IMG/VR virus record: IMGVR_UViG_3300030102_006934
Location: 248,001-312,000 of that record
DNA: 64,000 bases
Direction: 5' to 3' (one strand)
A model generated the notes under the pieces. That model did not search any database and was not told the origin of the DNA. It worked only from the letters and a program-made list of their open reading frames with translations. Below are positions 22,915 through 63,230 of the stretch, piece by piece (within the stretch, counting starts at the first letter, position 1; the number at the start of each line of letters is the position of its first letter). A program made the position numbers and the translations under genes.

Positions 22915-24892
22915 TGTAGATTATAATATAAAAATTTTAACACCTTCTTTAAAGAATGCTTTAGCTCTGCCTGAACAAAACTTTATTCCTTTAGAAATAA
23001 AATCTAAGAGAGCTCTATTAGAACCAGATAAAATTATAAAAGTTATAGACGCTTTCGAACAAACAAATATAGAAAGAAATGAGGTTAAAAAATATAGGAT
23101 AAATGGTAAGTTAAATATATTAACTGATAATAACATTATACCTGGTAATAGTTTAAGTGGTATTTTACCACAAGAAGCTTGGGACCCCACTAAATTAGAT
23201 AATACCTTTTTATATAGTAATTGGGCTTTTCAAATAACGTACCCCAGAAGTAAAGATAATACTAGATTATTAAATACGGCGGGGTACCCACAAGTATATT
23301 TTCAAAACCCAGTAGCTTCTAGTAAAGCTTATCAGGGTTTCCATATTACACAACTAATACCATACAGTACTACCCTTGGACCAATTGAAGGACTACCACA
23401 GGTGGGTGTAAAATATAAAGTTTTGGTTAGAACATCACAAAAACACGGTGTTGAAAATATAGGTGATTTTATTTACCTAAGTCCCCAAGTAGGGTTGACA
23501 GCAATAAATAGTTATCAATATTTAGGTTATCACAGAGTTCTTGATTTTGAAGTTGGTAACGAAGATTATGGTTTGGTTTTAGATTTAGAGTATATAATTG
23601 AAGGTTTCGGTGGTATCCCAACACAACCCTCCCCTTTCTTCGCTCTTGGTAAAACAGTATTTCAACCCTCCGCTGATGATATTGTTTTTTTGGGTAGTAA
23701 AAATATAACAACAATAAGGAGATCTAATAGGGTTGGTGATAACACAACAACCCCTCTAGAATATATAAAAATATATAGTGAAAAACACGGCCTAAAGGTA
23801 AACGATTTTATTGAACTTAGAAACAGTGAGAATGATCCAATAAACAATCTATATAAAATAGTCTCCACCCCAAACATAAACGAGTTTGTTATTCAATACG
23901 AATATGATGATACAACTCTTGATTTTATAGATGTAGATTTAAATTATAGATTCTGTGATGGTACTCCATCAGAATATTATTATTTAGATTTAGAAGTAAT
24001 AACCGAATTAACAGATTTTGAGATATATAACGCTGGGTTTTCAATTAATGTATTTGATGACCCTTATTCTGAAAAAAATTATCTATATCACTTTAATGGT
24101 GAAATAGATTTAGAAAATTTAAGGGACAATTTAAATAGACCTATAAGTGAACTTTATTTAACAATAACTAAAAGAGCTGGTGTTTTAACTGGTGGTACTT
24201 TCAACGGAACAAGTGCTTGGTCAGATGTATACAGTATTTTGGATTCTAATAAAAGCATTCAAAACAATAACAACCCATATGATATAAATAACGAATCACC
24301 CGAAAAATTACAATTCCTATCTTTTTGGAACAATGGTAATCCCGCAAATGGTAACAACCCCAACACGGCGGGGTCTATCACAAAATCTAATGTGGGTGAT
24401 AGATATATCGGAGACTTTGTTACTTACAATAGGTCTACTTTAACAGAAAAGACATTATCTAATGTACTGGGTAGAGCCGGTATTGTACAAGCAATAAAGG
24501 TATATGATGGTTCAGGTAATCAGATAGACGAAGACTATAAAGATTATGATGGTTATACCTATCAGTTACACAATAAGTTTAAAATAAGAGATTTCTCAGA
24601 CGCTATAGAAACAGTACCTAACAAAGACAATGAGATATATCCAGATTATGCTCAAATAAATAATGATGGTACATTATCTTGGAAAGATTTATTAACTGTT
24701 GGTTTCTTGGAATCGTCTAATAATAAAACATTGGGGGTTGATTATCCCTTTGTTAATGGAAAGCATTATTTATATGTGGACACGCCTATTTATATGAGAA
24801 GACAATTACCAACACAAATAGGTGAAGAAAGTTTAAATAGAACTAGATACGTTAAATTTGATACAGATAAAACACCTAATGATGAATGTTAA
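22907..24892 (+). CDS. Putative virion structural protein
   Basis: 661 aa, GTG start overlapping the previous stop, beta-rich composition. Confidence 0.6.
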   Translation: MSNVDYNIKILTPSLKNALALPEQNFIPLEIKSKRALLEPDKIIKVIDAFEQTNIERNEVKKYRINGKLNILTDNNIIPGNSLSGILPQEAWDPTKLDNTFLYSNWAFQITYPRSKDNTRLLNTAGYPQVYFQNPVASSKAYQGFHITQLIPYSTTLGPIEGLPQVGVKYKVLVRTSQKHGVENIGDFIYLSPQVGLTAINSYQYLGYHRVLDFEVGNEDYGLVLDLEYIIEGFGGIPTQPSPFFALGKTVFQPSADDIVFLGSKNITTIRRSNRVGDNTTTPLEYIKIYSEKHGLKVNDFIELRNSENDPINNLYKIVSTPNINEFVIQYEYDDTTLDFIDVDLNYRFCDGTPSEYYYLDLEVITELTDFEIYNAGFSINVFDDPYSEKNYLYHFNGEIDLENLRDNLNRPISELYLTITKRAGVLTGGTFNGTSAWSDVYSILDSNKSIQNNNNPYDINNESPEKLQFLSFWNNGNPANGNNPNTAGSITKSNVGDRYIGDFVTYNRSTLTEKTLSNVLGRAGIVQAIKVYDGSGNQIDEDYKDYDGYTYQLHNKFKIRDFSDAIETVPNKDNEIYPDYAQINNDGTLSWKDLLTVGFLESSNNKTLGVDYPFVNGKHYLYVDTPIYMRRQLPTQIGEESLNRTRYVKFDTDKTPNDEC

Positions 24893-57115: not shown

Positions 57116-58048
57116 ATGAATCCACATTATCAAGTCTTAGGTTTAAATTCTAACGCCACTGAAGAAGATATAAAAAAAGCTTATAGAAAATTAAGTAAAA
57201 AATATCACCCAGATTTAAACCCAGAAAACCCAAATGCTGAAGACATGTTTAAGAAGGTTTCAGAGGCCTATACTCACTTAACCGATACTAAAAAACATAC
57301 ATATAACAATAATGATTTTTTTAGTAGTTTTCAAAGAAGAAGAAAACCAAAGGCTAGAACAATACTATATAATCTAGAAATAACATTAGAAGAGGCATTT
57401 TTCGGTACTGAAAAACAATTAGAAATTGTTAGGGATGTTGTTTGTGATAGCTGTAAAGGAGATGGTGGTATAGATAAAGTTAGTTGTAATCAATGTAATG
57501 GTCAGGGAATATTAAAGGGTGATAATACTTTTTATATGTGTAATAATTGTATGGGTAAAGGATTTTTATTCATGAAAAAATGTGGTACTTGTCACATGTC
57601 TGGTTATAAAACAGAAAAAAAAATAATTACCATAAATATAAACCCCAGTATATTAAATAACATGAATATAACTAAATTTGGTGTTGGTAGTGAGGTTAAA
57701 GATGGATTGACTGGGGACGTTTTAATTTCAACATCCATAAAAAAACACAAACACTTTACCCTAGAAGGTTACGATTTAAAGATGAAAAAACCATTATCAG
57801 TATTAGATGTTATTTTAGGTGGTGAGTTTAATGTAAAAACGATAGATGGTGAGGTTAAAATAAAGATACCACAATTCTCAGATATTAATAATTACTTTAG
57901 GGTTAAAAATAAAGGTATGAGAAAAGAAAACAACAAAAGAGGTGATTTATACGTCAAGATAGAACCCAAGTACCCTAAAAAAATAAACCCTCAAGAAATG
58001 GCTCTAATAAATGCCTTAAAAAACTCACCCAACTTTAAACTAGACTAG
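57116..58048 (+). CDS. dnaJ: DnaJ (type I) co-chaperone
   Basis: J-domain [12 protein letters not shown], four CxxCxGxG-type repeats, C-terminal GDL/GDV and TIDG motifs. Confidence 0.92.
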
Positions 58049-58065
58049 AATATTTATATTATGAA

Positions 58066-59274
58066 ATGTATAAAATAAAAAAAGGTCATCTAATCAATGA
58101 GATAATGGGGGTACCCCAACAACTAGAACCTTGGACGAACTCTTTTAGTGAGATAATAGTAGATGTTATAAAAAAAGAAATTGCTAAAGGTTGGCCTTAT
58201 TCTGGTGAAGTAATCTATATTAATGATGATGGTGATGAGATTACTGATATTGCTCATAAAACAGAGAATATAAACATAGGTGGTAAAGAGTTTATGAAAC
58301 TTTTAGCGAAAAACAAAGGTTTTTCTAATGAAAAAGAACTTTTAAAATCCAAAATGTTTAAAGATTTTCCACTATGGAGACCAGAAATAAGAGTAGAGGT
58401 AAAGGCGATACCCAAAGAACTTTACGAAAAAGAGAGAACAACAGTTCAAGCAGATTTTGGTATGGAAATGCAACAAGAGTTAAGTACTCTAGCTGGTCAA
58501 AAAGTATTACCTAAATCTAAATTTGGTTTTGATATAATAACTGCGTTAAAAGATGGTGGTGACTTTGATAGTAAATTGGTGGGTGAATTAAAATCAAGTA
58601 TAGCACACGAATTATTACACGCATATCAAAAATATAAACAACTACAGGCAGGCGGTAAATCACACTATGGTCGTGAAACGGTTTTAAACGCACTATCACA
58701 AAACCCAACACTAACCGATATAGAAATTAATTGGTGGAAATCATTTTTACATTTAATATATCTACACTTATCTTTTGAAATAAACGCTAGAGTCACTCAA
58801 CTATATCATGAAATGCTAGATAAAGGAGTCAAAACAAAAGAAGATTTTTTAAAAGAGTTAAAAAATTCTCAAGTATGGAACGAGATGAAAAATTTAGAAG
58901 AATTTAATGCTAAAGAATATATTGAAACTTTTAAAATACCGAAGTTAAATAATCTAAATGATATCACGGAAAACCCACTACTTTACTTATCTAAATTACA
59001 AAAATTAAAAAATATAAAAGATAGGGGGGTTGATATATTGGACAAGAATCAAACCCTAAAAGATTTAATTAATCTGTGGGACGATGTCTTACGTATAGGT
59101 AATAAACATGTTAAAAATACTACAGGTATAGACTTCAATATGTTACCAGTTCCAGAAAGTGCTAGAGAAAACCCATTTTTATTCTTTAAATTTTTCGAAA
59201 AAAGATTTCACAAAAAGGCAAAAAAATGGAAGAAAAAACTATATAGATTAGCTAGTTTATTGATTAAAGACTAG
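58066..59274 (+). CDS. Putative zincin metalloprotease (HExxH)
   Basis: SIAHELLHAYQ with downstream FEINARV; ATATTTATA at 58050. Confidence 0.6.
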   Translation: MYKIKKGHLINEIMGVPQQLEPWTNSFSEIIVDVIKKEIAKGWPYSGEVIYINDDGDEITDIAHKTENINIGGKEFMKLLAKNKGFSNEKELLKSKMFKDFPLWRPEIRVEVKAIPKELYEKERTTVQADFGMEMQQELSTLAGQKVLPKSKFGFDIITALKDGGDFDSKLVGELKSSIAHELLHAYQKYKQLQAGGKSHYGRETVLNALSQNPTLTDIEINWWKSFLHLIYLHLSFEINARVTQLYHEMLDKGVKTKEDFLKELKNSQVWNEMKNLEEFNAKEYIETFKIPKLNNLNDITENPLLYLSKLQKLKNIKDRGVDILDKNQTLKDLINLWDDVLRIGNKHVKNTTGIDFNMLPVPESARENPFLFFKFFEKRFHKKAKKWKKKLYRLASLLIKD

Positions 59275-59333
59275 TTTAGTTGTTTACATTTAAAATAAAT
59301 AATACTAAGTTTATAAAAAAATAAATATATATT

Positions 59334-59756
59334 ATGAGCAAAATTGAAAACGGAAAAACTGTTAAAGTACATTATACTGGTAAATTCGATGACCAAAATG
59401 TATTTGACTCTTCTCTAGAGAGAGAACCATTAGAAGTAACTTTGGGTAAAGGTCAGTTAATACCTGGGTTCGAAAAAGGGTTAGTTGGGTTATCTGAAGG
59501 TGATAAGAAAACTATTGAAATACAAGCTTCTGAAGCTTACGGTGAATTAAGAGAAGACTTAATTCAAGAAGTAGGCATAACTCAACTACCAGAAAATGTA
59601 CAGGTAGGTGACAGATTACAAGCACAAGCTGAAAACGGAAACCCAATCCCAGTAGTAGTTACTGAAATCAATGGGAGTAAGGCAAAAGTAGATGCTAATC
59701 ATCCATTAGCTGGTAAAAATTTAATTTTCGATGTCGAGGTACTTGAGGTAGTTTAA
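59334..59756 (+). CDS. FKBP-type peptidyl-prolyl isomerase (SlyD/FkpB-like, no His tail)
   Basis: VKVHYTG..VFDSS..PLEVTLG.GQLIPGFE..L, AYGE, VDANHPLAGKNL.FDVEV. Confidence 0.92.
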   Translation: MSKIENGKTVKVHYTGKFDDQNVFDSSLEREPLEVTLGKGQLIPGFEKGLVGLSEGDKKTIEIQASEAYGELREDLIQEVGITQLPENVQVGDRLQAQAENGNPIPVVVTEINGSKAKVDANHPLAGKNLIFDVEVLEVV

Positions 59757-60253: not shown

Positions 60254-60465
60254 TGATAGGTTTAATATTTATAGTAGGTTGTCTTATATCTTCATTGTAT
60301 GTAACATTTTTTTTATTTGAAAATCGTGTAGATGAAAAAAATGGGAACAATATTAAAATAGACGATGCTATGGATTATGATGGCCATGGTAATTGGGGTA
60401 GATTTCCACCTAAAAAGATTAAGATTAAAGAGGGTGGTGTAAAAAAAATAAATAAAAACTATTGA
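60250..60465 (+). CDS. Small single-TM protein
   Basis: LIFIVGCLISSLYVTFFLF..DYDGHGNWGRF. Confidence 0.6.
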   Translation: MMIGLIFIVGCLISSLYVTFFLFENRVDEKNGNNIKIDDAMDYDGHGNWGRFPPKKIKIKEGGVKKINKNY

Positions 60466-60492
60466 CTAATTAAAAAACATTACTTATATTTG
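60462..60492 (+). promoter_or_regulatory. Promoter TTGACT-17-TATATTTG driving the DUF2828 unit
   Basis: Exact 17-nt spacing; -7 element ends 22 nt upstream of ATG 60515. Confidence 0.7.
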
Positions 60493-60514
60493 TATAATTA
60501 AAAATTTGGAAACT

Positions 60515-61933
60515 ATGTCAAAATTAATGGAAGCTTTACAAAGAGAGAACACAACTACTACTAATGGTATGACCACAAGTTCATCATCATTAAATAATTG
60601 TGTTAACTTGTTTTTCTCCATCGGAGCGATGAGAGGGAAGAACAAAAATAGGGTAATTTCTATTTTTTCCAAAGCTTTCAATGAAGATGCTAGAACTGCG
60701 ATGAGAATTTTATTCTGGTCTAGAGATGTTAGGTTTGGAGCAGGTGAAAGACAAATCTTTAGAGATGTGTTATCTTACCTAGTAGAGAACCATACTGAAG
60801 TGGTTAAAGCTAATCTTGACTTAATTCCAGAGTACGGAAGATGGGATGATGTTCATGGACTAATCGGAACCGATTTAGAAAATGAAGCTATCTCACTTCT
60901 TGTATATGGTTTAAAAGAAGCTAACGGTTTAACAGCTAAATGGATGCCTCGTAAAGGTTTAGTATTTAATAAAGTACGAAAACATTTAAAAGTCACCCCA
61001 AAAGAGTTGAGAAAACTAATAGTTTCACTATCAAACACAGTTGAACAAAAAATGTGTTCAGGTAAGTGGGGAGAAATCGAATACCATAAATCACCATCAT
61101 TAGCTATGTCTAGATATAGTAAAGCTTTTGGTAGGAATGATTATGATAGATTCACTGAATTTATACAAAATCTAAAAAAGGGTAAAACCACAGTTAACGC
61201 TGGAGCTTTATACCCTTATGATATAACTAAAAATGTGTCTTATGGGGACGCTGATTTAGCTAGTGAACAATGGAAAGCTTTACCTAATTGGATGGAGGGT
61301 TCAGATGAACTAATCCTACCTATGGTTGATGTTTCTGGTTCTATGGGTTGTTCCGCAGGTAACAATAAAAATTTATCTTGTATGGACGTAGCTGTATCAT
61401 TAGGTTTATATATTTCAGAAAGAAACGAGGGAGCTTTTAAGGATATGTTTATGACATTTTCTTCAACACCCAAAGTTCAAACTTTATTGGGTTCATTGAA
61501 AGATAGAATGTTACAATTAAGTAGAGCTGAGTGGGGGTTCAGTACCAACATCGAAGCTGCTTTTCAAACCATCTTAGACCAAGCTGTTAAATTTAATATA
61601 CCACAAAATGAAATGCCAACCAAGGTATTAATTTTATCGGATATGGAATTTGATTCAGCGGTTAAAGGTAAAGAAATTAACCCTAGTGTTATGACTATGA
61701 TTGATGAAATGTATACCGAAGCTGGTTATACCAGACCTGGTATTATATTTTGGAATATTAATAGTCATGGGGATAACTTCCCAGCTAAGTTTGATGAAAT
61801 GGGTACCGCTTTAATTAGTGGTTTTAGCCCAAGTATAATGAAGTCAGTGATTTCAAATCCTAATAGTTTAACACCTATTAATATTATGAATGAAACTGTT
61901 AATTCAGAAAGATACGAATCGGTAACGATTTAA
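60515..61933 (+). CDS. DUF2828-family Ro60/TROVE-like protein with C-terminal vWA domain
   Basis: TTNGM, LFWSRDVRFGAGER..F, IPEYGRWDD, AKWMPR, VNAGALYPYD, vWA MIDAS VDVSGSM, ILSDMEFD, IIFWN, SGFSP. Confidence 0.82.
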   Translation: MSKLMEALQRENTTTTNGMTTSSSSLNNCVNLFFSIGAMRGKNKNRVISIFSKAFNEDARTAMRILFWSRDVRFGAGERQIFRDVLSYLVENHTEVVKANLDLIPEYGRWDDVHGLIGTDLENEAISLLVYGLKEANGLTAKWMPRKGLVFNKVRKHLKVTPKELRKLIVSLSNTVEQKMCSGKWGEIEYHKSPSLAMSRYSKAFGRNDYDRFTEFIQNLKKGKTTVNAGALYPYDITKNVSYGDADLASEQWKALPNWMEGSDELILPMVDVSGSMGCSAGNNKNLSCMDVAVSLGLYISERNEGAFKDMFMTFSSTPKVQTLLGSLKDRMLQLSRAEWGFSTNIEAAFQTILDQAVKFNIPQNEMPTKVLILSDMEFDSAVKGKEINPSVMTMIDEMYTEAGYTRPGIIFWNINSHGDNFPAKFDEMGTALISGFSPSIMKSVISNPNSLTPINIMNETVNSERYESVTI

Positions 61934-61945
61934 GTTCTTTGACAT

Positions 61946-62086
61946 AAAGTATTGTGGTATTAAGGAATAATTGCAGCAATTATCTTTAAACGATCAAATA
62001 GAGAAAAGGCTTTGATAACCTTAAAGGTGGTGATTTATGTCACTACCATATAAAAGAGTCAAACGATTCTGTTACCACAAAACTTT
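61946..62086 (+). ncRNA. Candidate structured ncRNA module 1 (DUF2828-associated)
   Basis: Ends pair: AAAGT/ACTTT, TTGTGGTA/TACCACAA, GGAAT/ATTCT. Internal hairpins AAGG/CCTT and GGTGGTGAT/GTCACTACC. Confidence 0.6.
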
Positions 62087-62088
62087 TA

Positions 62089-62352
62089 GATATAAAACGA
62101 ATGGATTCTGCAACCTATAACTTCAAAAATAGAAACGTAGAATAGAGGTTTTATCCCACCTTTACCCAAAATTTATAAAGGGGGTGACCATAGGTAAGTT
62201 TAAACGTAGGACAATCCTACACTTGAGGTCGTAAAACATACCTCTTGGATTTGTCTCAAGTAAAATAAAGACATTCAGTGGGGCTGAATTAAAAATCTAC
62301 CGTATCTACAGTGGTTACGTGAAAAATAAAAACTGAACACCATTCCGATATC
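62089..62352 (+). ncRNA. Candidate structured ncRNA module 2 (DUF2828-associated)
   Basis: Ends pair: GATAT/ATATC, GAATGG/CCATTC. Internal helices ACCTAT/ATAGGT, CCTTTA/TAAAGG, GTAGGA/TCCTAC, ACTTGAG/CTCAAGT, ATTCAG/CTGAAT, CGTA/TACG. Confidence 0.6.
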
Positions 62353-62360
62353 AAAAAACT

Positions 62361-62392
62361 AGGGGGGGAAATTATTTTCCCCCTTTTTTTTT
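62361..62392 (+). terminator. Rho-independent terminator closing the DUF2828 + ncRNA unit
   Basis: AGGGGGGGAA-ATTATT-TTCCCCC followed by a long T run. Confidence 0.88.
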
Positions 62393-62447
62393 ATAAAGCT
62401 TTTTTTATTTTTAAAAAATAACTATAATTATTTAAAATGTTATAACA

Positions 62448-63230
62448 ATGAAATATTTTTTCGACATAAAAGAGATAGATAAAAATTTAGCAATAGATTT
62501 TATACAAGAAAGACACTACTCTAAAGTACTACCTAGATTGACTAAACACTGGTTGGGTTGTTTTTACGATGGTGAACTAGTGGGTGTTTTAACTTTAGGT
62601 TGGGGTACACAGCCTTTACAGACAATAAAAAAATTATTCCCTAAGTTGGTATCACAAGATTATTATGAAATCGGTAAAATGTGTATGGATGATAAAATGC
62701 CTAGGAACTCAGAGTCTCAAATGATATCTTCAGTTGTCAGATGGATTAAAATTAATCTACCAGAAAAAAAATTTTTATACACATGGGCTGATGGTATTGT
62801 AGGTAAAGTGGGTTACGTTTATCAAGCTTCAAATTTCATATATGGTGGTTTTATATGGACAGATATCTATATATCTCCGAAAGGTGAAAAAATACACCCT
62901 AGAAGTTCTAAGTCACTACTAAAAGAAAATGCTGATTTTTTGGGTAAAGATAAGTTATTTTGGATGACCCCAGATTTTATGAAAACAAAGGGTATTAGAA
63001 GGATAAGGGGTAAACAATTTAGGTATATTATACCCCTAAGTAAAAGTTCTAAAAAAATATTAAAAAATGGGTCCACTGTCACTTGGGGTATAGAATACCC
63101 TAAAGCTAAAGATCTATTATGGAAAGAACAAGTTGCTAAAGGTAAATATGATACACTAAAAGAGATACCACAAATGAATTTAAGTGTTGTAGAGATTAAT
63201 GAAAAAAATGTGAACGCACATAAGAATTAA
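62448..63230 (+). CDS. Mom-like GNAT-fold DNA modification protein (paralog 1)
   Basis: FIQERHYS, GELVGVLTLG, YEIGKMCM..PRNSESQMIS, YTWADG..G.VYQASNFIYGG. Confidence 0.75.
   Translation: MKYFFDIKEIDKNLAIDFIQERHYSKVLPRLTKHWLGCFYDGELVGVLTLGWGTQPLQTIKKLFPKLVSQDYYEIGKMCMDDKMPRNSESQMISSVVRWIKINLPEKKFLYTWADGIVGKVGYVYQASNFIYGGFIWTDIYISPKGEKIHPRSSKSLLKENADFLGKDKLFWMTPDFMKTKGIRRIRGKQFRYIIPLSKSSKKILKNGSTVTWGIEYPKAKDLLWKEQVAKGKYDTLKEIPQMNLSVVEINEKNVNAHKN

What the first reader, a model, noticed from the sequence alone, without database searches (positions are those of the whole stretch)
60462..62392. Ro60/TROVE-like DUF2828 gene transcribed with two tandem end-paired RNAs: candidate phage Y-RNA-analogous RNP system
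Seen in sequence: one unit runs from promoter (60462-60492) through the DUF2828-vWA gene (60515-61933) and ~430 nt with no ORF of 60 aa or more to a strong terminator (62361-62392). Other intergenic gaps in the window are short and almost pure A/T. This one is visibly richer in G/C and resolves into two back-to-back modules (61946-62086 and 62089-62352, 2 nt apart). In each module the 5' and 3' ends pair into a helix interrupted by an internal loop, enclosing variable hairpins separated by A-rich linkers. Established: Ro60 (TROVE+vWA ring) binds the end-paired stem of Y RNAs, which tether it to nucleases such as PNPase, and bacterial Ro genes often sit next to their Y RNA genes. Inference: DUF2828 is a Ro60-like ring protein and these are its cognate RNAs. 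They lack the canonical Y-RNA GGUCCGA stem, so they would be a distinct RNA class. Possible roles include RNA repair or decay control, or countering host RNA-targeting defences.
Basis: partly seen in the sequence, partly recalled or inferred. Interest (0 to 1): 0.88.

Follow-up and report, generated by a model that had tools for sequence, protein, structure and literature searches.

The report
Ro-like phage protein with partner RNAs
A jumbo phage carries a gene for a Ro60-like ring protein followed by two real, conserved structured RNAs; these belong to a widespread, apparently undescribed RNA family that travels with this gene in phages and prophages and shares its hallmark with the enigmatic Class I RNAs of Dictyostelium.

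Summary
Gene 60515-61933 (DUF2828+DUF7788) is followed by 430 nt with no ORF of 28 aa or more, then a strong terminator. Its AlphaFold model matches only Ro60 structures over its full length. The tract is conserved in relatives and forms two tandem RNAs, each closed by a bipartite end helix that covaries (module 2: 26 of 53 pairs compensatory).

Outside the window a general rule emerged. DUF2828 genes in diverged phages and prophages (Felix O1, mycobacteriophage Faith1, Listeria, Staphylococcus, Campylobacter and Bacillus phages, many MAGs) are flanked, always on the same strand, by 1-4 RNAs. Each has a 7-bp end helix, the loop motif UUACAGCAA beside its 5' strand, and an unpaired G after its 3' strand. 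All 145 covariance-model hits at E<=0.1 lay on the gene's strand.

Small copies (about 60 nt) match the Rfam model of Dictyostelium Class I RNAs below threshold. Copies of about 125 nt enclose a T-arm and a D-arm-like hairpin, as in YrlA Y RNAs. The window's RNAs are enlarged, divergent members.

Best reading: cognate Y-RNA-like partners of a Ro-like protein. Binding and function remain untested.

The parts
60462..60490 (+). Promoter-like site, TTGACT-17 nt-TATATT. A candidate only.
   Evidence: 10 of 12 matches, but such sites are not enriched over shuffles in this AT-rich region.
60515..61933 (+). Gene for a 472-aa Ro60-like protein: DUF2828 helical-repeat domain plus a DUF7788/vWA domain with an intact MIDAS motif.
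   Evidence: Pfam PF11443 and PF25043, and PHROG 850 'RNA-binding protein'. AlphaFold model and Foldseek matches to Ro60. Invariant D272, S274, S276.
61946..62086 (+). RNA module 1 (141 nt), a multi-hairpin RNA closed by helices P0 and P1.
   Evidence: z = -5.8. Conserved in 12 relatives and, by nhmmer, in L040, L042 and L043.
61952..61959 (+). Module 1, P0 5' strand (UUGUGGUA). Pairs with 62073-62080 (UACCACAA).
   Evidence: Compensatory changes in L040, L043 and L030. Coordinates verified.
61964..61968 (+). Module 1, P1 5' strand (GGAAU). Pairs with 62066-62070 (AUUCU).
   Evidence: First pair is GC in 8, GU in 2 and AU in 2 relatives.
61969..61979 (+). Module 1, family motif next to P1 (AAUUGCAGCAA). 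Invariant in all relatives.
62089..62352 (+). RNA module 2 (264 nt), a multi-branched RNA closed by helices P0 and P1.
   Evidence: 26 of 53 consensus pairs carry compensatory changes and 97.8% of cells are paired.
62089..62093 (+). Module 2, P0 5' strand (GAUAU). Pairs with 62348-62352 (AUAUC).
   Evidence: Becomes GGUGU/ACACC in relatives and AAUGU/ACAUU in L030.
62099..62104 (+). Module 2, P1 5' strand (GAAUGG). Pairs with 62340-62345 (CCAUUC).
62105..62113 (+). Module 2, family motif next to P1 (AUUCUGCAA). It reads UUACAGCAA in relative L012.
62361..62394 (+). Intrinsic terminator: 11-bp hairpin followed by a U run.
   Evidence: Relatives also place a terminator directly after the last module.

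Best explanation
The gene and the two downstream RNAs form one expression unit encoding a ribonucleoprotein of the Ro60/Y-RNA type.

The protein is a ring of helical repeats closed by a vWA domain. Each RNA is closed by a terminal helix (P1, extended here by an outer helix P0). The 5' strand of P1 runs straight into a conserved single-stranded motif. The family consensus is UUACAGCAA; the window has UUGCAGCAA in module 1 and UUCUGCAA in module 2.

My proposal is that helix plus motif is the platform the Ro-like protein recognises, as Ro60 recognises the conserved end stem of Y RNAs. The variable interior of each RNA would be the working part. It could tether or sequester a host RNA-handling or defence factor, or gate access to the ring. 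The likely benefit to the phage is protection of its RNAs or tRNAs, or escape from a host defence.

Shown: the fold of the protein, the structure and conservation of the RNAs, and the strict same-strand genomic linkage across very different phages.

Inferred: co-transcription, physical binding, and the cellular role.
For: Protein: the AlphaFold model matches only Ro60/TROVE structures at full length.

RNA reality in the window's clade:
- Covariation in both modules.
- G-U pairs far outnumber A-C cells, 42 to 5 in module 2 and 18 to 6 in module 1. Alifold energy is better on the + strand.

Family-wide signature:
- A descriptor (6-bp helix, then 2-3 nt, then CNGCA[A/C], and a G two positions after the 3' strand) hits 69 of 77 viral loci just downstream of the gene. 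Density is 2.2 per kb there against 0.26 per kb elsewhere.
- In 33 small modules the seventh base pair, which the descriptor did not impose, is paired in 33 of 33 (AU 24, UA 7, GC 2).

Covariance model R1:
- 62 of 62 hits on the gene's strand in the viral loci and named-phage loci searched together.
- 83 of 83 hits on the gene's strand in an independent set of 80 genome loci, covering 52 loci.
- In the first 45 kb of Felix O1, all four hits on the gene's strand lie within 1.1 kb downstream of the gene, between tRNA genes. The only other hit is a weak one on the opposite strand (E = 0.44).

Other support:
- Named phages with 2-4 copies next to the gene: Felix O1, Faith1, S-CoN_Ph6, LMTA-57, NCTC12673, Tsamsa.
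- The 122-125-nt copies in Felix O1, Tsamsa and Faith1 enclose a perfect T-arm, a hairpin and a D-arm-like hairpin. Rfam YrlA aligns end to end to the Faith1 copy (21.7 bits, E = 0.027).
- Precedent: bacterial and phage Ro60 genes sit next to their Y RNAs (PMC4201824), and Thermus phage phiLo Ro60 binds two adjacent Y-like RNAs and host PNPase (PMC12135203).
- Function hint: Bas63 gp130 is described as Ro60-like, lies just upstream of that phage's tRNA cluster, and counters the Ppl defence (PMC11482910). Felix O1 has the same layout.
Against: - No binding, expression or processing data exist for any member.
- The window's own RNAs are too enlarged and divergent for model R1 to detect. Their membership rests on position, tandem order, the helix-plus-motif arrangement and intermediate forms: L012 has the canonical motif, and L040 and L043 combine a module 1 homologue with a canonical small module.
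- Module 2 is not convincingly stable on energy alone (z = -2.0).
- No copy was found within 2 kb of the gene in Aeh1, fHe-Yen9-04 or Astolliot, and only a doubtful one in nt-1.
- Pfam's TROVE model does not hit the protein, and a profile search of PDB sequences gives only E = 0.12 to the phiLo protein.
- That Bas63 gp130 is a DUF2828 protein is my inference from synteny in Felix O1-type phages. I did not test it directly.
Confidence: 0.7

Rival explanations
1. The RNAs are real and functional but act without the DUF2828 protein. They could be tRNA-like decoys, or processing or spacer elements of phage tRNA operons handled by host enzymes. They would sit near the gene only because both belong to the same early or tRNA region.
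For: In Felix O1 and Tsamsa the copies are interspersed among tRNA genes, and in NCTC12673 they follow a tRNA cluster. The approximately 125-nt copies carry T- and D-like arms.
Against: The window and most viral loci have no tRNA gene nearby, yet they keep the RNAs directly after the gene. The linkage holds in phages of Gram-negative, Gram-positive and actinobacterial hosts and in prophages, with 145 of 145 model hits on the gene's strand. That pattern fits a two-part module that moves together.
Confidence: 0.15
2. The tract is a cis-acting 3' untranslated region. It would stabilise the DUF2828 mRNA, or act as an operator through which the protein regulates its own mRNA. It would not be a set of free RNAs.
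For: No promoter-like site lies between the gene and the RNAs, and the terminator follows them. They are therefore probably made as part of the mRNA.
Against: In many loci the modules lie upstream of the gene (LMTA-57, NCTC12673, Tsamsa, L069-L076, most genome loci), after an intervening ORF (L019-L026), or between tRNAs up to 1.1 kb away. A 3'-UTR role does not fit that. The look-alike Class I RNAs of Dictyostelium are free, abundant RNAs (PMC7919456).
Confidence: 0.1
3. The modules are DNA-level elements, either miniature inverted-repeat mobile elements or recombination sites. Their terminal inverted repeats would only mimic covariation.
For: They occur in multiple tandem copies, each with a 7-bp inverted repeat at its ends.
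Against: G-U pairs are tolerated and A-C is not (42 to 5 and 18 to 6). The asymmetric motif and every model hit are on one strand, the gene's. The internal helices of module 2 also covary.
Confidence: 0.03
4. The tract is a leader or riboswitch for the downstream Mom-like gene, a small-protein gene, or a chance fold.
For: A Mom-like gene starts 55 nt after the terminator.
Against: A strong terminator separates the two. The downstream gene differs among relatives that keep the RNAs. No ORF exceeds 27 aa and none is conserved. The covariation excludes chance.
Confidence: 0.02

Closest known systems
Ro60-Y RNA ribonucleoproteins, including bacterial Rsr with YrlA/YrlB, mycobacteriophage Ro with YrlA (PMC4201824), and Thermus phage phiLo Ro60 with Yrl1/Yrl2 (PMC12135203)
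   Same: - A ring protein of helical repeats plus a vWA domain.
- One to several small RNAs encoded next to the gene on the same strand.
- RNAs closed by a helix formed by their 5' and 3' ends, with a conserved element at that helix and a variable interior.
- A larger tRNA-like RNA plus smaller ones: Felix O1, Tsamsa and Faith1 parallel YrlA plus YrlB.
   Different: - The protein belongs to Pfam DUF2828/DUF7788, not TROVE. Sequence similarity to Ro60 is at noise level.
- The conserved RNA element is UUACAGCAA, not GGUCCGA or GNCGAAN0-1G.
- Rfam Y_RNA and YrlA models do not reach threshold. The best score is 21.7 bits against a cut-off of 69, in Faith1 only.
- The window's RNAs have no canonical T-arm.
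Dictyostelium Class I RNAs (Rfam RF01414; PMC7919456)
   Same: - A short helix joining the 5' and 3' ends, whose sequence varies while pairing is kept.
- An adjacent conserved single-stranded motif. The Rfam consensus is CUUACAGCAA and the phage consensus is UUACAGCAA. C6, C9, A10 and A11 of the 11-nt motif are near-invariant in both.
- A 5' G and a 3' end reading C-U-G-U, where the C pairs with that G.
- Length of about 60 nt, a variable A/U-rich remainder, and several different copies per genome.
- RF01414 is the best non-tRNA Rfam family on the small phage modules.
   Different: - Class I RNAs are eukaryotic, individually transcribed from DUSE promoters, and reported as unique to dictyostelids.
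- Their known direct partner is the RRM protein Rnp1A.
- Phage copies score 15-32 bits, below the cut-off of 41.5.
- The window's own RNAs are 141 and 264 nt with altered motifs.
- I could not test whether Dictyostelium has a DUF2828 protein.
Bas63 gp130, the Ro60-like counter-defence protein of a Felix O1-type coliphage (PMC11482910)
   Same: It is described as structurally Ro60-like and lies directly upstream of the tRNA cluster. This is the position of the DUF2828 gene in Felix O1 and in 260 related records. Its authors guessed that some neighbouring 'tRNAs' might be Y RNAs.
   Different: The partner RNAs proposed here are not the tRNAs. They are four unannotated RNAs lying between the tRNAs. 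The identity of gp130 with the DUF2828 family is inferred from synteny, not tested. The window's phage is an unrelated 380-kb jumbo phage.

Membership tests
Ro60/TROVE protein family | N-terminal ring of HEAT-like helical repeats (TROVE domain) | tested here: inconclusive
   At fold level the feature is met. The six best Foldseek PDB matches are Ro60/TROVE structures aligned over 494-560 columns (TM 0.53-0.63). At sequence level it is not met. Pfam TROVE gives no hit, phmmer against PDB finds nothing, and the profile search gives only E = 0.12 to the phiLo protein.
Ro60/TROVE protein family | C-terminal vWA domain with a MIDAS motif | tested here: met
   DUF7788 E = 7e-44, with VWA_2 below its cut-off. 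The DxSxS residues D272, S274 and S276 are invariant in 38 sequences. vWA domains fill the lower ranks of the fold search.
Ro60/TROVE protein family | Binds Y RNA and misfolded RNA | not testable with these tools
   Needs EMSA, RIP-seq or a structure.
Y RNA / YrlA (Rfam RF00019, RF02553) | Encoded close to the Ro gene on the same strand | tested here: met
   In the window the RNAs start 13 nt after the stop codon. Family-wide, 145 of 145 model hits lie on the gene's strand.
Y RNA / YrlA (Rfam RF00019, RF02553) | 5' and 3' ends pair into a long stem interrupted by a loop or bulge | tested here: met
   P0 and P1 are separated by an asymmetric internal loop in both modules, and both helices covary.
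Y RNA / YrlA (Rfam RF00019, RF02553) | Conserved Ro-binding sequence GGUCCGA, or GNCGAAN0-1G / CGAA | tested here: not met
   Module 2 reads AACGAAUG at P1, but the C is an A in 5 of 13 relatives. The family-wide conserved element is UUACAGCAA.
Y RNA / YrlA (Rfam RF00019, RF02553) | tRNA-like domain with T and D arms (YrlA) | tested here: not met
   The window has no ARAGORN hit, no YrlA or tRNA hit at E up to 10, and no 5-bp T-arm. The feature is present in the 122-125-nt relatives of Felix O1, Tsamsa and Faith1.
Y RNA / YrlA (Rfam RF00019, RF02553) | Reaches the Rfam gathering score | tested here: not met
   No hit in the window. The best related score is 21.7 bits against 69, in Faith1.
Dictyostelium Class I RNA (Rfam RF01414) | Short helix joining the 5' and 3' ends | tested here: met
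   P1 is present in both window modules. In the small relatives it is a 7-bp helix that is 100% paired, and all seven pairs covary.
Dictyostelium Class I RNA (Rfam RF01414) | 11-nt motif (CCUUACAGCAA) adjacent to the 5' strand of the helix | tested here: inconclusive
   Small relatives have UUACAGCAA, with C, G, C and A invariant. The window has the variants UUGCAGCAA and UUCUGCAA.
Dictyostelium Class I RNA (Rfam RF01414) | Length 42-65 nt, 3' end CUGU, gathering score 41.5 bits | tested here: not met
   The window RNAs are 141 and 264 nt and get no RF01414 hit. Small relatives are 50-65 nt and mostly end in CUG(U), but they score only 15-32 bits.
Dictyostelium Class I RNA (Rfam RF01414) | Eukaryotic gene with a DUSE promoter; partner protein Rnp1A | not tested
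   Not applicable to a phage. Whether dictyostelids have a DUF2828 protein could not be checked with these tools.

The most novel reading that the evidence does not exclude
The RNAs linked to DUF2828 in phages and prophages, and the Class I RNAs of Dictyostelium, are one family. They would be the 'Y RNAs' of a second, DUF2828-type lineage of Ro-like ring proteins, present in viruses, bacteria and eukaryotes. That reading predicts the missing protein partner of Class I RNAs, and hence a function for RNAs known since 2004 and thought unique to social amoebae. It also identifies the RNA cofactors of the phage counter-defence protein gp130.
Probability: 0.35. Interest if true: 0.92.

Novelty: new variant of a known kind. 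Interest (0 to 1): 0.82.

Why it matters
Ro60/Y-RNA particles are conserved from bacteria to humans, yet their roles are only partly understood.

The evidence here points to a second, much more widespread phage lineage of Ro-like proteins. It occurs in 710 phage records and in thousands of metagenomic protein clusters. It appears to have its own dedicated RNA family, recognisable by a simple signature. In model phages such as Felix O1 those RNAs sit unannotated between tRNA genes.

This makes three things directly testable:
- what the widespread 'RNA-binding protein' of phage annotation actually binds;
- whether the counter-defence activity reported for Bas63 gp130 needs these RNAs;
- whether Dictyostelium Class I RNAs, whose mechanism has been open for two decades, work through a Ro-like protein.

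Tried and rejected
Searches that found nothing:
- Rfam at gathering thresholds on the whole window, and ARAGORN.
- Rfam at E up to 10 on the tract. Only terminator-driven noise appeared.
- blastn of the tract against 50,697 phage records.
- Sequence searches of PDB. Nothing was significant; the only related hit was the phiLo TROVE protein at E = 0.12 with a profile.
- Literature on 'DUF2828'. The five papers found are all unrelated to function. No paper describing these RNAs turned up.

Searches that fell short:
- Model R1, built from small modules, does not detect the window's own enlarged modules.
- Rfam YrlA does not hit the tRNA-like copy of Felix O1.
- MAFFT misaligned the 3' ends of the module 1 homologues L030, L040 and L043. 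I read their helices directly from the sequences instead.
- The large protein search returned only unnamed close relatives, so it could not show whether Dictyostelium has a DUF2828 protein.
- Avesson 2011 and Aspegren 2004 are not held, so the three other Class I RNA-binding proteins remain unknown to me.

Explanations rejected: a leader for the Mom-like gene, a small ORF, a DNA-level inverted-repeat element, and a chance fold. Reasons are given under the rival explanations.
Full report
**The locus.** The window comes from a 380-kb IMG/VR jumbo-phage contig.
- The gene at 60515-61933 (+) encodes 472 aa with Pfam DUF2828 (E = 2e-33) and DUF7788 (E = 7e-44), plus a sub-threshold VWA_2 match. It belongs to PHROG 850, annotated 'RNA-binding protein'.
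- Downstream, 61934-62447 holds no ORF above 27 aa. It is the longest internal ORF-free gap of the window, and its GC matches coding sequence.
- A strong intrinsic terminator lies at 62361-62394. A promoter-like site lies at 60462-60490, although such sites are not enriched here.
- The next gene is Mom-like.

**The protein.**
- An AlphaFold model built on 38 homologues is confident (pLDDT 88, pTM 0.89).
- Its six best PDB matches are all Ro60/TROVE proteins aligned over the whole chain: Thermus phage phiLo Ro60, Xenopus Ro and human Ro60. After them come isolated vWA domains.
- The MIDAS residues are invariant.
- Sequence methods barely see the relationship, which is why Pfam keeps DUF2828 apart from TROVE.
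- The family occurs in 710 phage records from many host groups. Some are already labelled 'Ro-like RNA binding protein'.

**The two RNAs in the window.**
- Module 1 (61946-62086) is much more stable than shuffled sequence (z = -5.8). Module 2 (62089-62352) is marginal on energy (z = -2.0).
- The tract is conserved at 62-84% identity behind the orthologous gene in about 20 viral contigs, giving 12 distinct sequences.
- RNAalifold on module 2 gives 53 pairs, 26 of them with compensatory changes. 97.8% of cells are paired, against 35-46% when partners are slid by 1-3 columns.
- Module 2's outer helix switches from GAUAU/AUAUC to GGUGU/ACACC.
- Module 1 keeps P0 and P1. P0 covaries in the more distant L040 and L043.
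- G-U pairs greatly outnumber A-C cells, and the + strand gives the better consensus fold. The structure is therefore an RNA structure on the gene's strand.

**The general rule.** Long ORF-free gaps follow the gene in many distant loci. Reading them revealed a shared signature:
- a terminal helix whose sequence differs from group to group;
- a 5' strand that runs straight into (U)UACAGCAA;
- a 3' strand followed by an unpaired G;
- one to four such modules in tandem, then a terminator.

The tests of this rule:
- A simple descriptor finds the signature downstream of the gene in 69 of 77 viral loci, about eight times denser than elsewhere.
- In an alignment of 33 small modules (50-65 nt), all seven pairs of the helix covary. 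The seventh pair was not part of the descriptor, yet it is paired in 33 of 33.
- Covariance model R1, built from that alignment, gives 62 hits in the viral and named-phage loci and 83 hits in an independent set of 80 bacterial and archaeal genome loci. Every hit is on the gene's strand and close to the gene, upstream or downstream.
- In the first 45 kb of Felix O1, all four hits on the gene's strand lie in the spacers between tRNA genes just after the gene. The only other hit is a weak one on the opposite strand.
- Faith1, Staphylococcus phage S-CoN_Ph6, Listeria phage LMTA-57, Campylobacter phage NCTC12673 and Bacillus phage Tsamsa each carry two or three copies beside the gene.
- Aeh1, fHe-Yen9-04 and Astolliot show none within 2 kb.

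**How the window's RNAs fit.** They are enlarged, divergent members of this family.
- Module 2 has P1 GAAUGG/CCAUUC followed by AUUCUGCAA. Its orthologue in L012 has the canonical UUACAGCAA.
- Module 1 has P1 GGAAU/AUUCU followed by AAUUGCAGCAA.
- L040 and L043 pair a homologue of module 1 with a canonical small module.
- Both window RNAs add an outer helix, P0.
- A second DUF2828 paralogue elsewhere in the same phage (L038) has its own single 133-nt module and terminator.

**Relation to known RNAs.** No Rfam family reaches threshold anywhere. Two sub-threshold matches are informative.

First, YrlA:
- Rfam YrlA aligns end to end with the 122-nt Faith1 module, including its T-arm and D-arm.
- The 125-nt Felix O1 copy and the 123-nt Tsamsa copy have the same layout. 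It runs P1, hairpin, perfect T-arm (loop UUCGAUU), hairpin, D-arm-like hairpin.
- A locus can therefore hold one tRNA-like RNA plus small ones, as Salmonella has YrlA plus YrlB (PMC4201824).

Second, Dictyostelium Class I RNAs:
- RF01414 is the best non-tRNA family on the small modules, scoring up to 32.4 bits against a cut-off of 41.5.
- Its consensus is a 6-bp helix, then CUUACAGCAA, then a variable stretch, then the helix again, then UG. That is the phage signature.
- Kjellin et al. describe Class I RNAs as 42-65 nt with a 6-bp covarying end helix. They report an adjacent 11-nt motif in which U3, C6, C9, A10 and A11 are nearly invariant, a conserved 5' G, and a 3' CUGU.
- They also report that no such RNAs exist outside dictyostelids (PMC7919456).
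- I could not determine whether dictyostelids encode a DUF2828 protein. Homologues do exist in plants, as noted in the Aeh1 record.

**Mechanism.** The best-supported reading is a Ro60/Y-RNA-type particle.
- The helix plus motif would be the protein's docking platform.
- The variable body would be the effector.
- Precedents are the Rsr-Y RNA-PNPase machine and phiLo Ro60, which binds adjacent Y-like RNAs and host PNPase (PMC4201824, PMC12135203).
- A biological hint comes from Bas63 gp130. It is Ro60-like, lies directly upstream of the tRNA cluster, and is needed to escape the Ppl defence (PMC11482910). I infer from Felix O1 synteny that gp130 is this family.
- Binding, processing and role are all untested.

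**Verdict.** The finding is a new variant of a known kind of system, with an unexpected and testable link to Dictyostelium Class I RNAs.

Noticed in passing
L038:3001-4640 (same phage contig, outside the window): The phage carries a second DUF2828 paralogue (57% identity). It has its own single 133-nt module (GAAUGC | AUUCAGCAA ... GCAUUC | UG) and a terminator.
   Followed up: partly
L081:3669-4501 (Salmonella phage Felix O1, record 23873-24705): Four unannotated RNAs with the helix-plus-UACAGCAA signature lie in the spacers between tRNA genes just after the DUF2828 gene. The fourth (125 nt) has a perfect T-arm and a D-arm-like hairpin. In the old record, 'unknown' ORFs are annotated on the opposite strand of these spacers.
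   Followed up: partly
L087:3429-3776 (Staphylococcus phage S-CoN_Ph6): Three small modules directly after the gene overlap tiny CDSs annotated as hypothetical. These are probably miscalled RNA genes.
   Followed up: no
Loops of small modules (alignment A6): The A-rich, G-poor loops contain extra AGCAA copies: 11 observed against 1.4 expected from shuffles, in 8 of 33 loops. The motif may therefore be bound more than once. The sequences are not all independent.
   Followed up: partly
L085:470-1021 and L085:4850-5497 (Listeria phage LMTA-57): A ROOL RNA match (88.5 bits, just under the cut-off of 99.1) lies about 1 kb upstream of the DUF2828 locus. A 'tRNA-splicing ligase' (RtcB-type) gene lies 1.3 kb downstream, which recalls bacterial rsr-Y RNA-rtcB operons.
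   Followed up: no
L048:5793-6285: A phage-borne tmRNA gene (tag EEVELAVAV; Rfam 80 bits) lies 1.4 kb downstream of the DUF2828 gene.
   Followed up: no
window 57116-59756: Just upstream of the locus the phage encodes a full DnaJ-type co-chaperone (J domain, zinc-finger domain and C-terminal domain) and an FKBP-type prolyl isomerase. A 402-aa ORF (58066-59274) lies between them and has no Pfam or PHROG match.
   Followed up: no
window 62448-63230: A Mom-like DNA-modification gene follows the terminator. An ORF of similar size (241-264 aa) follows the RNAs in L002, L003, L015 and L016, but not in the other relatives.
   Followed up: no
window 62006-62024: Module 1 contains a conserved, covarying hairpin with the loop UUUGAUA, at about the position where the 125-nt relatives have their T-arm (loop UUCGAUU). 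It may be a degenerate T-arm.
   Followed up: no
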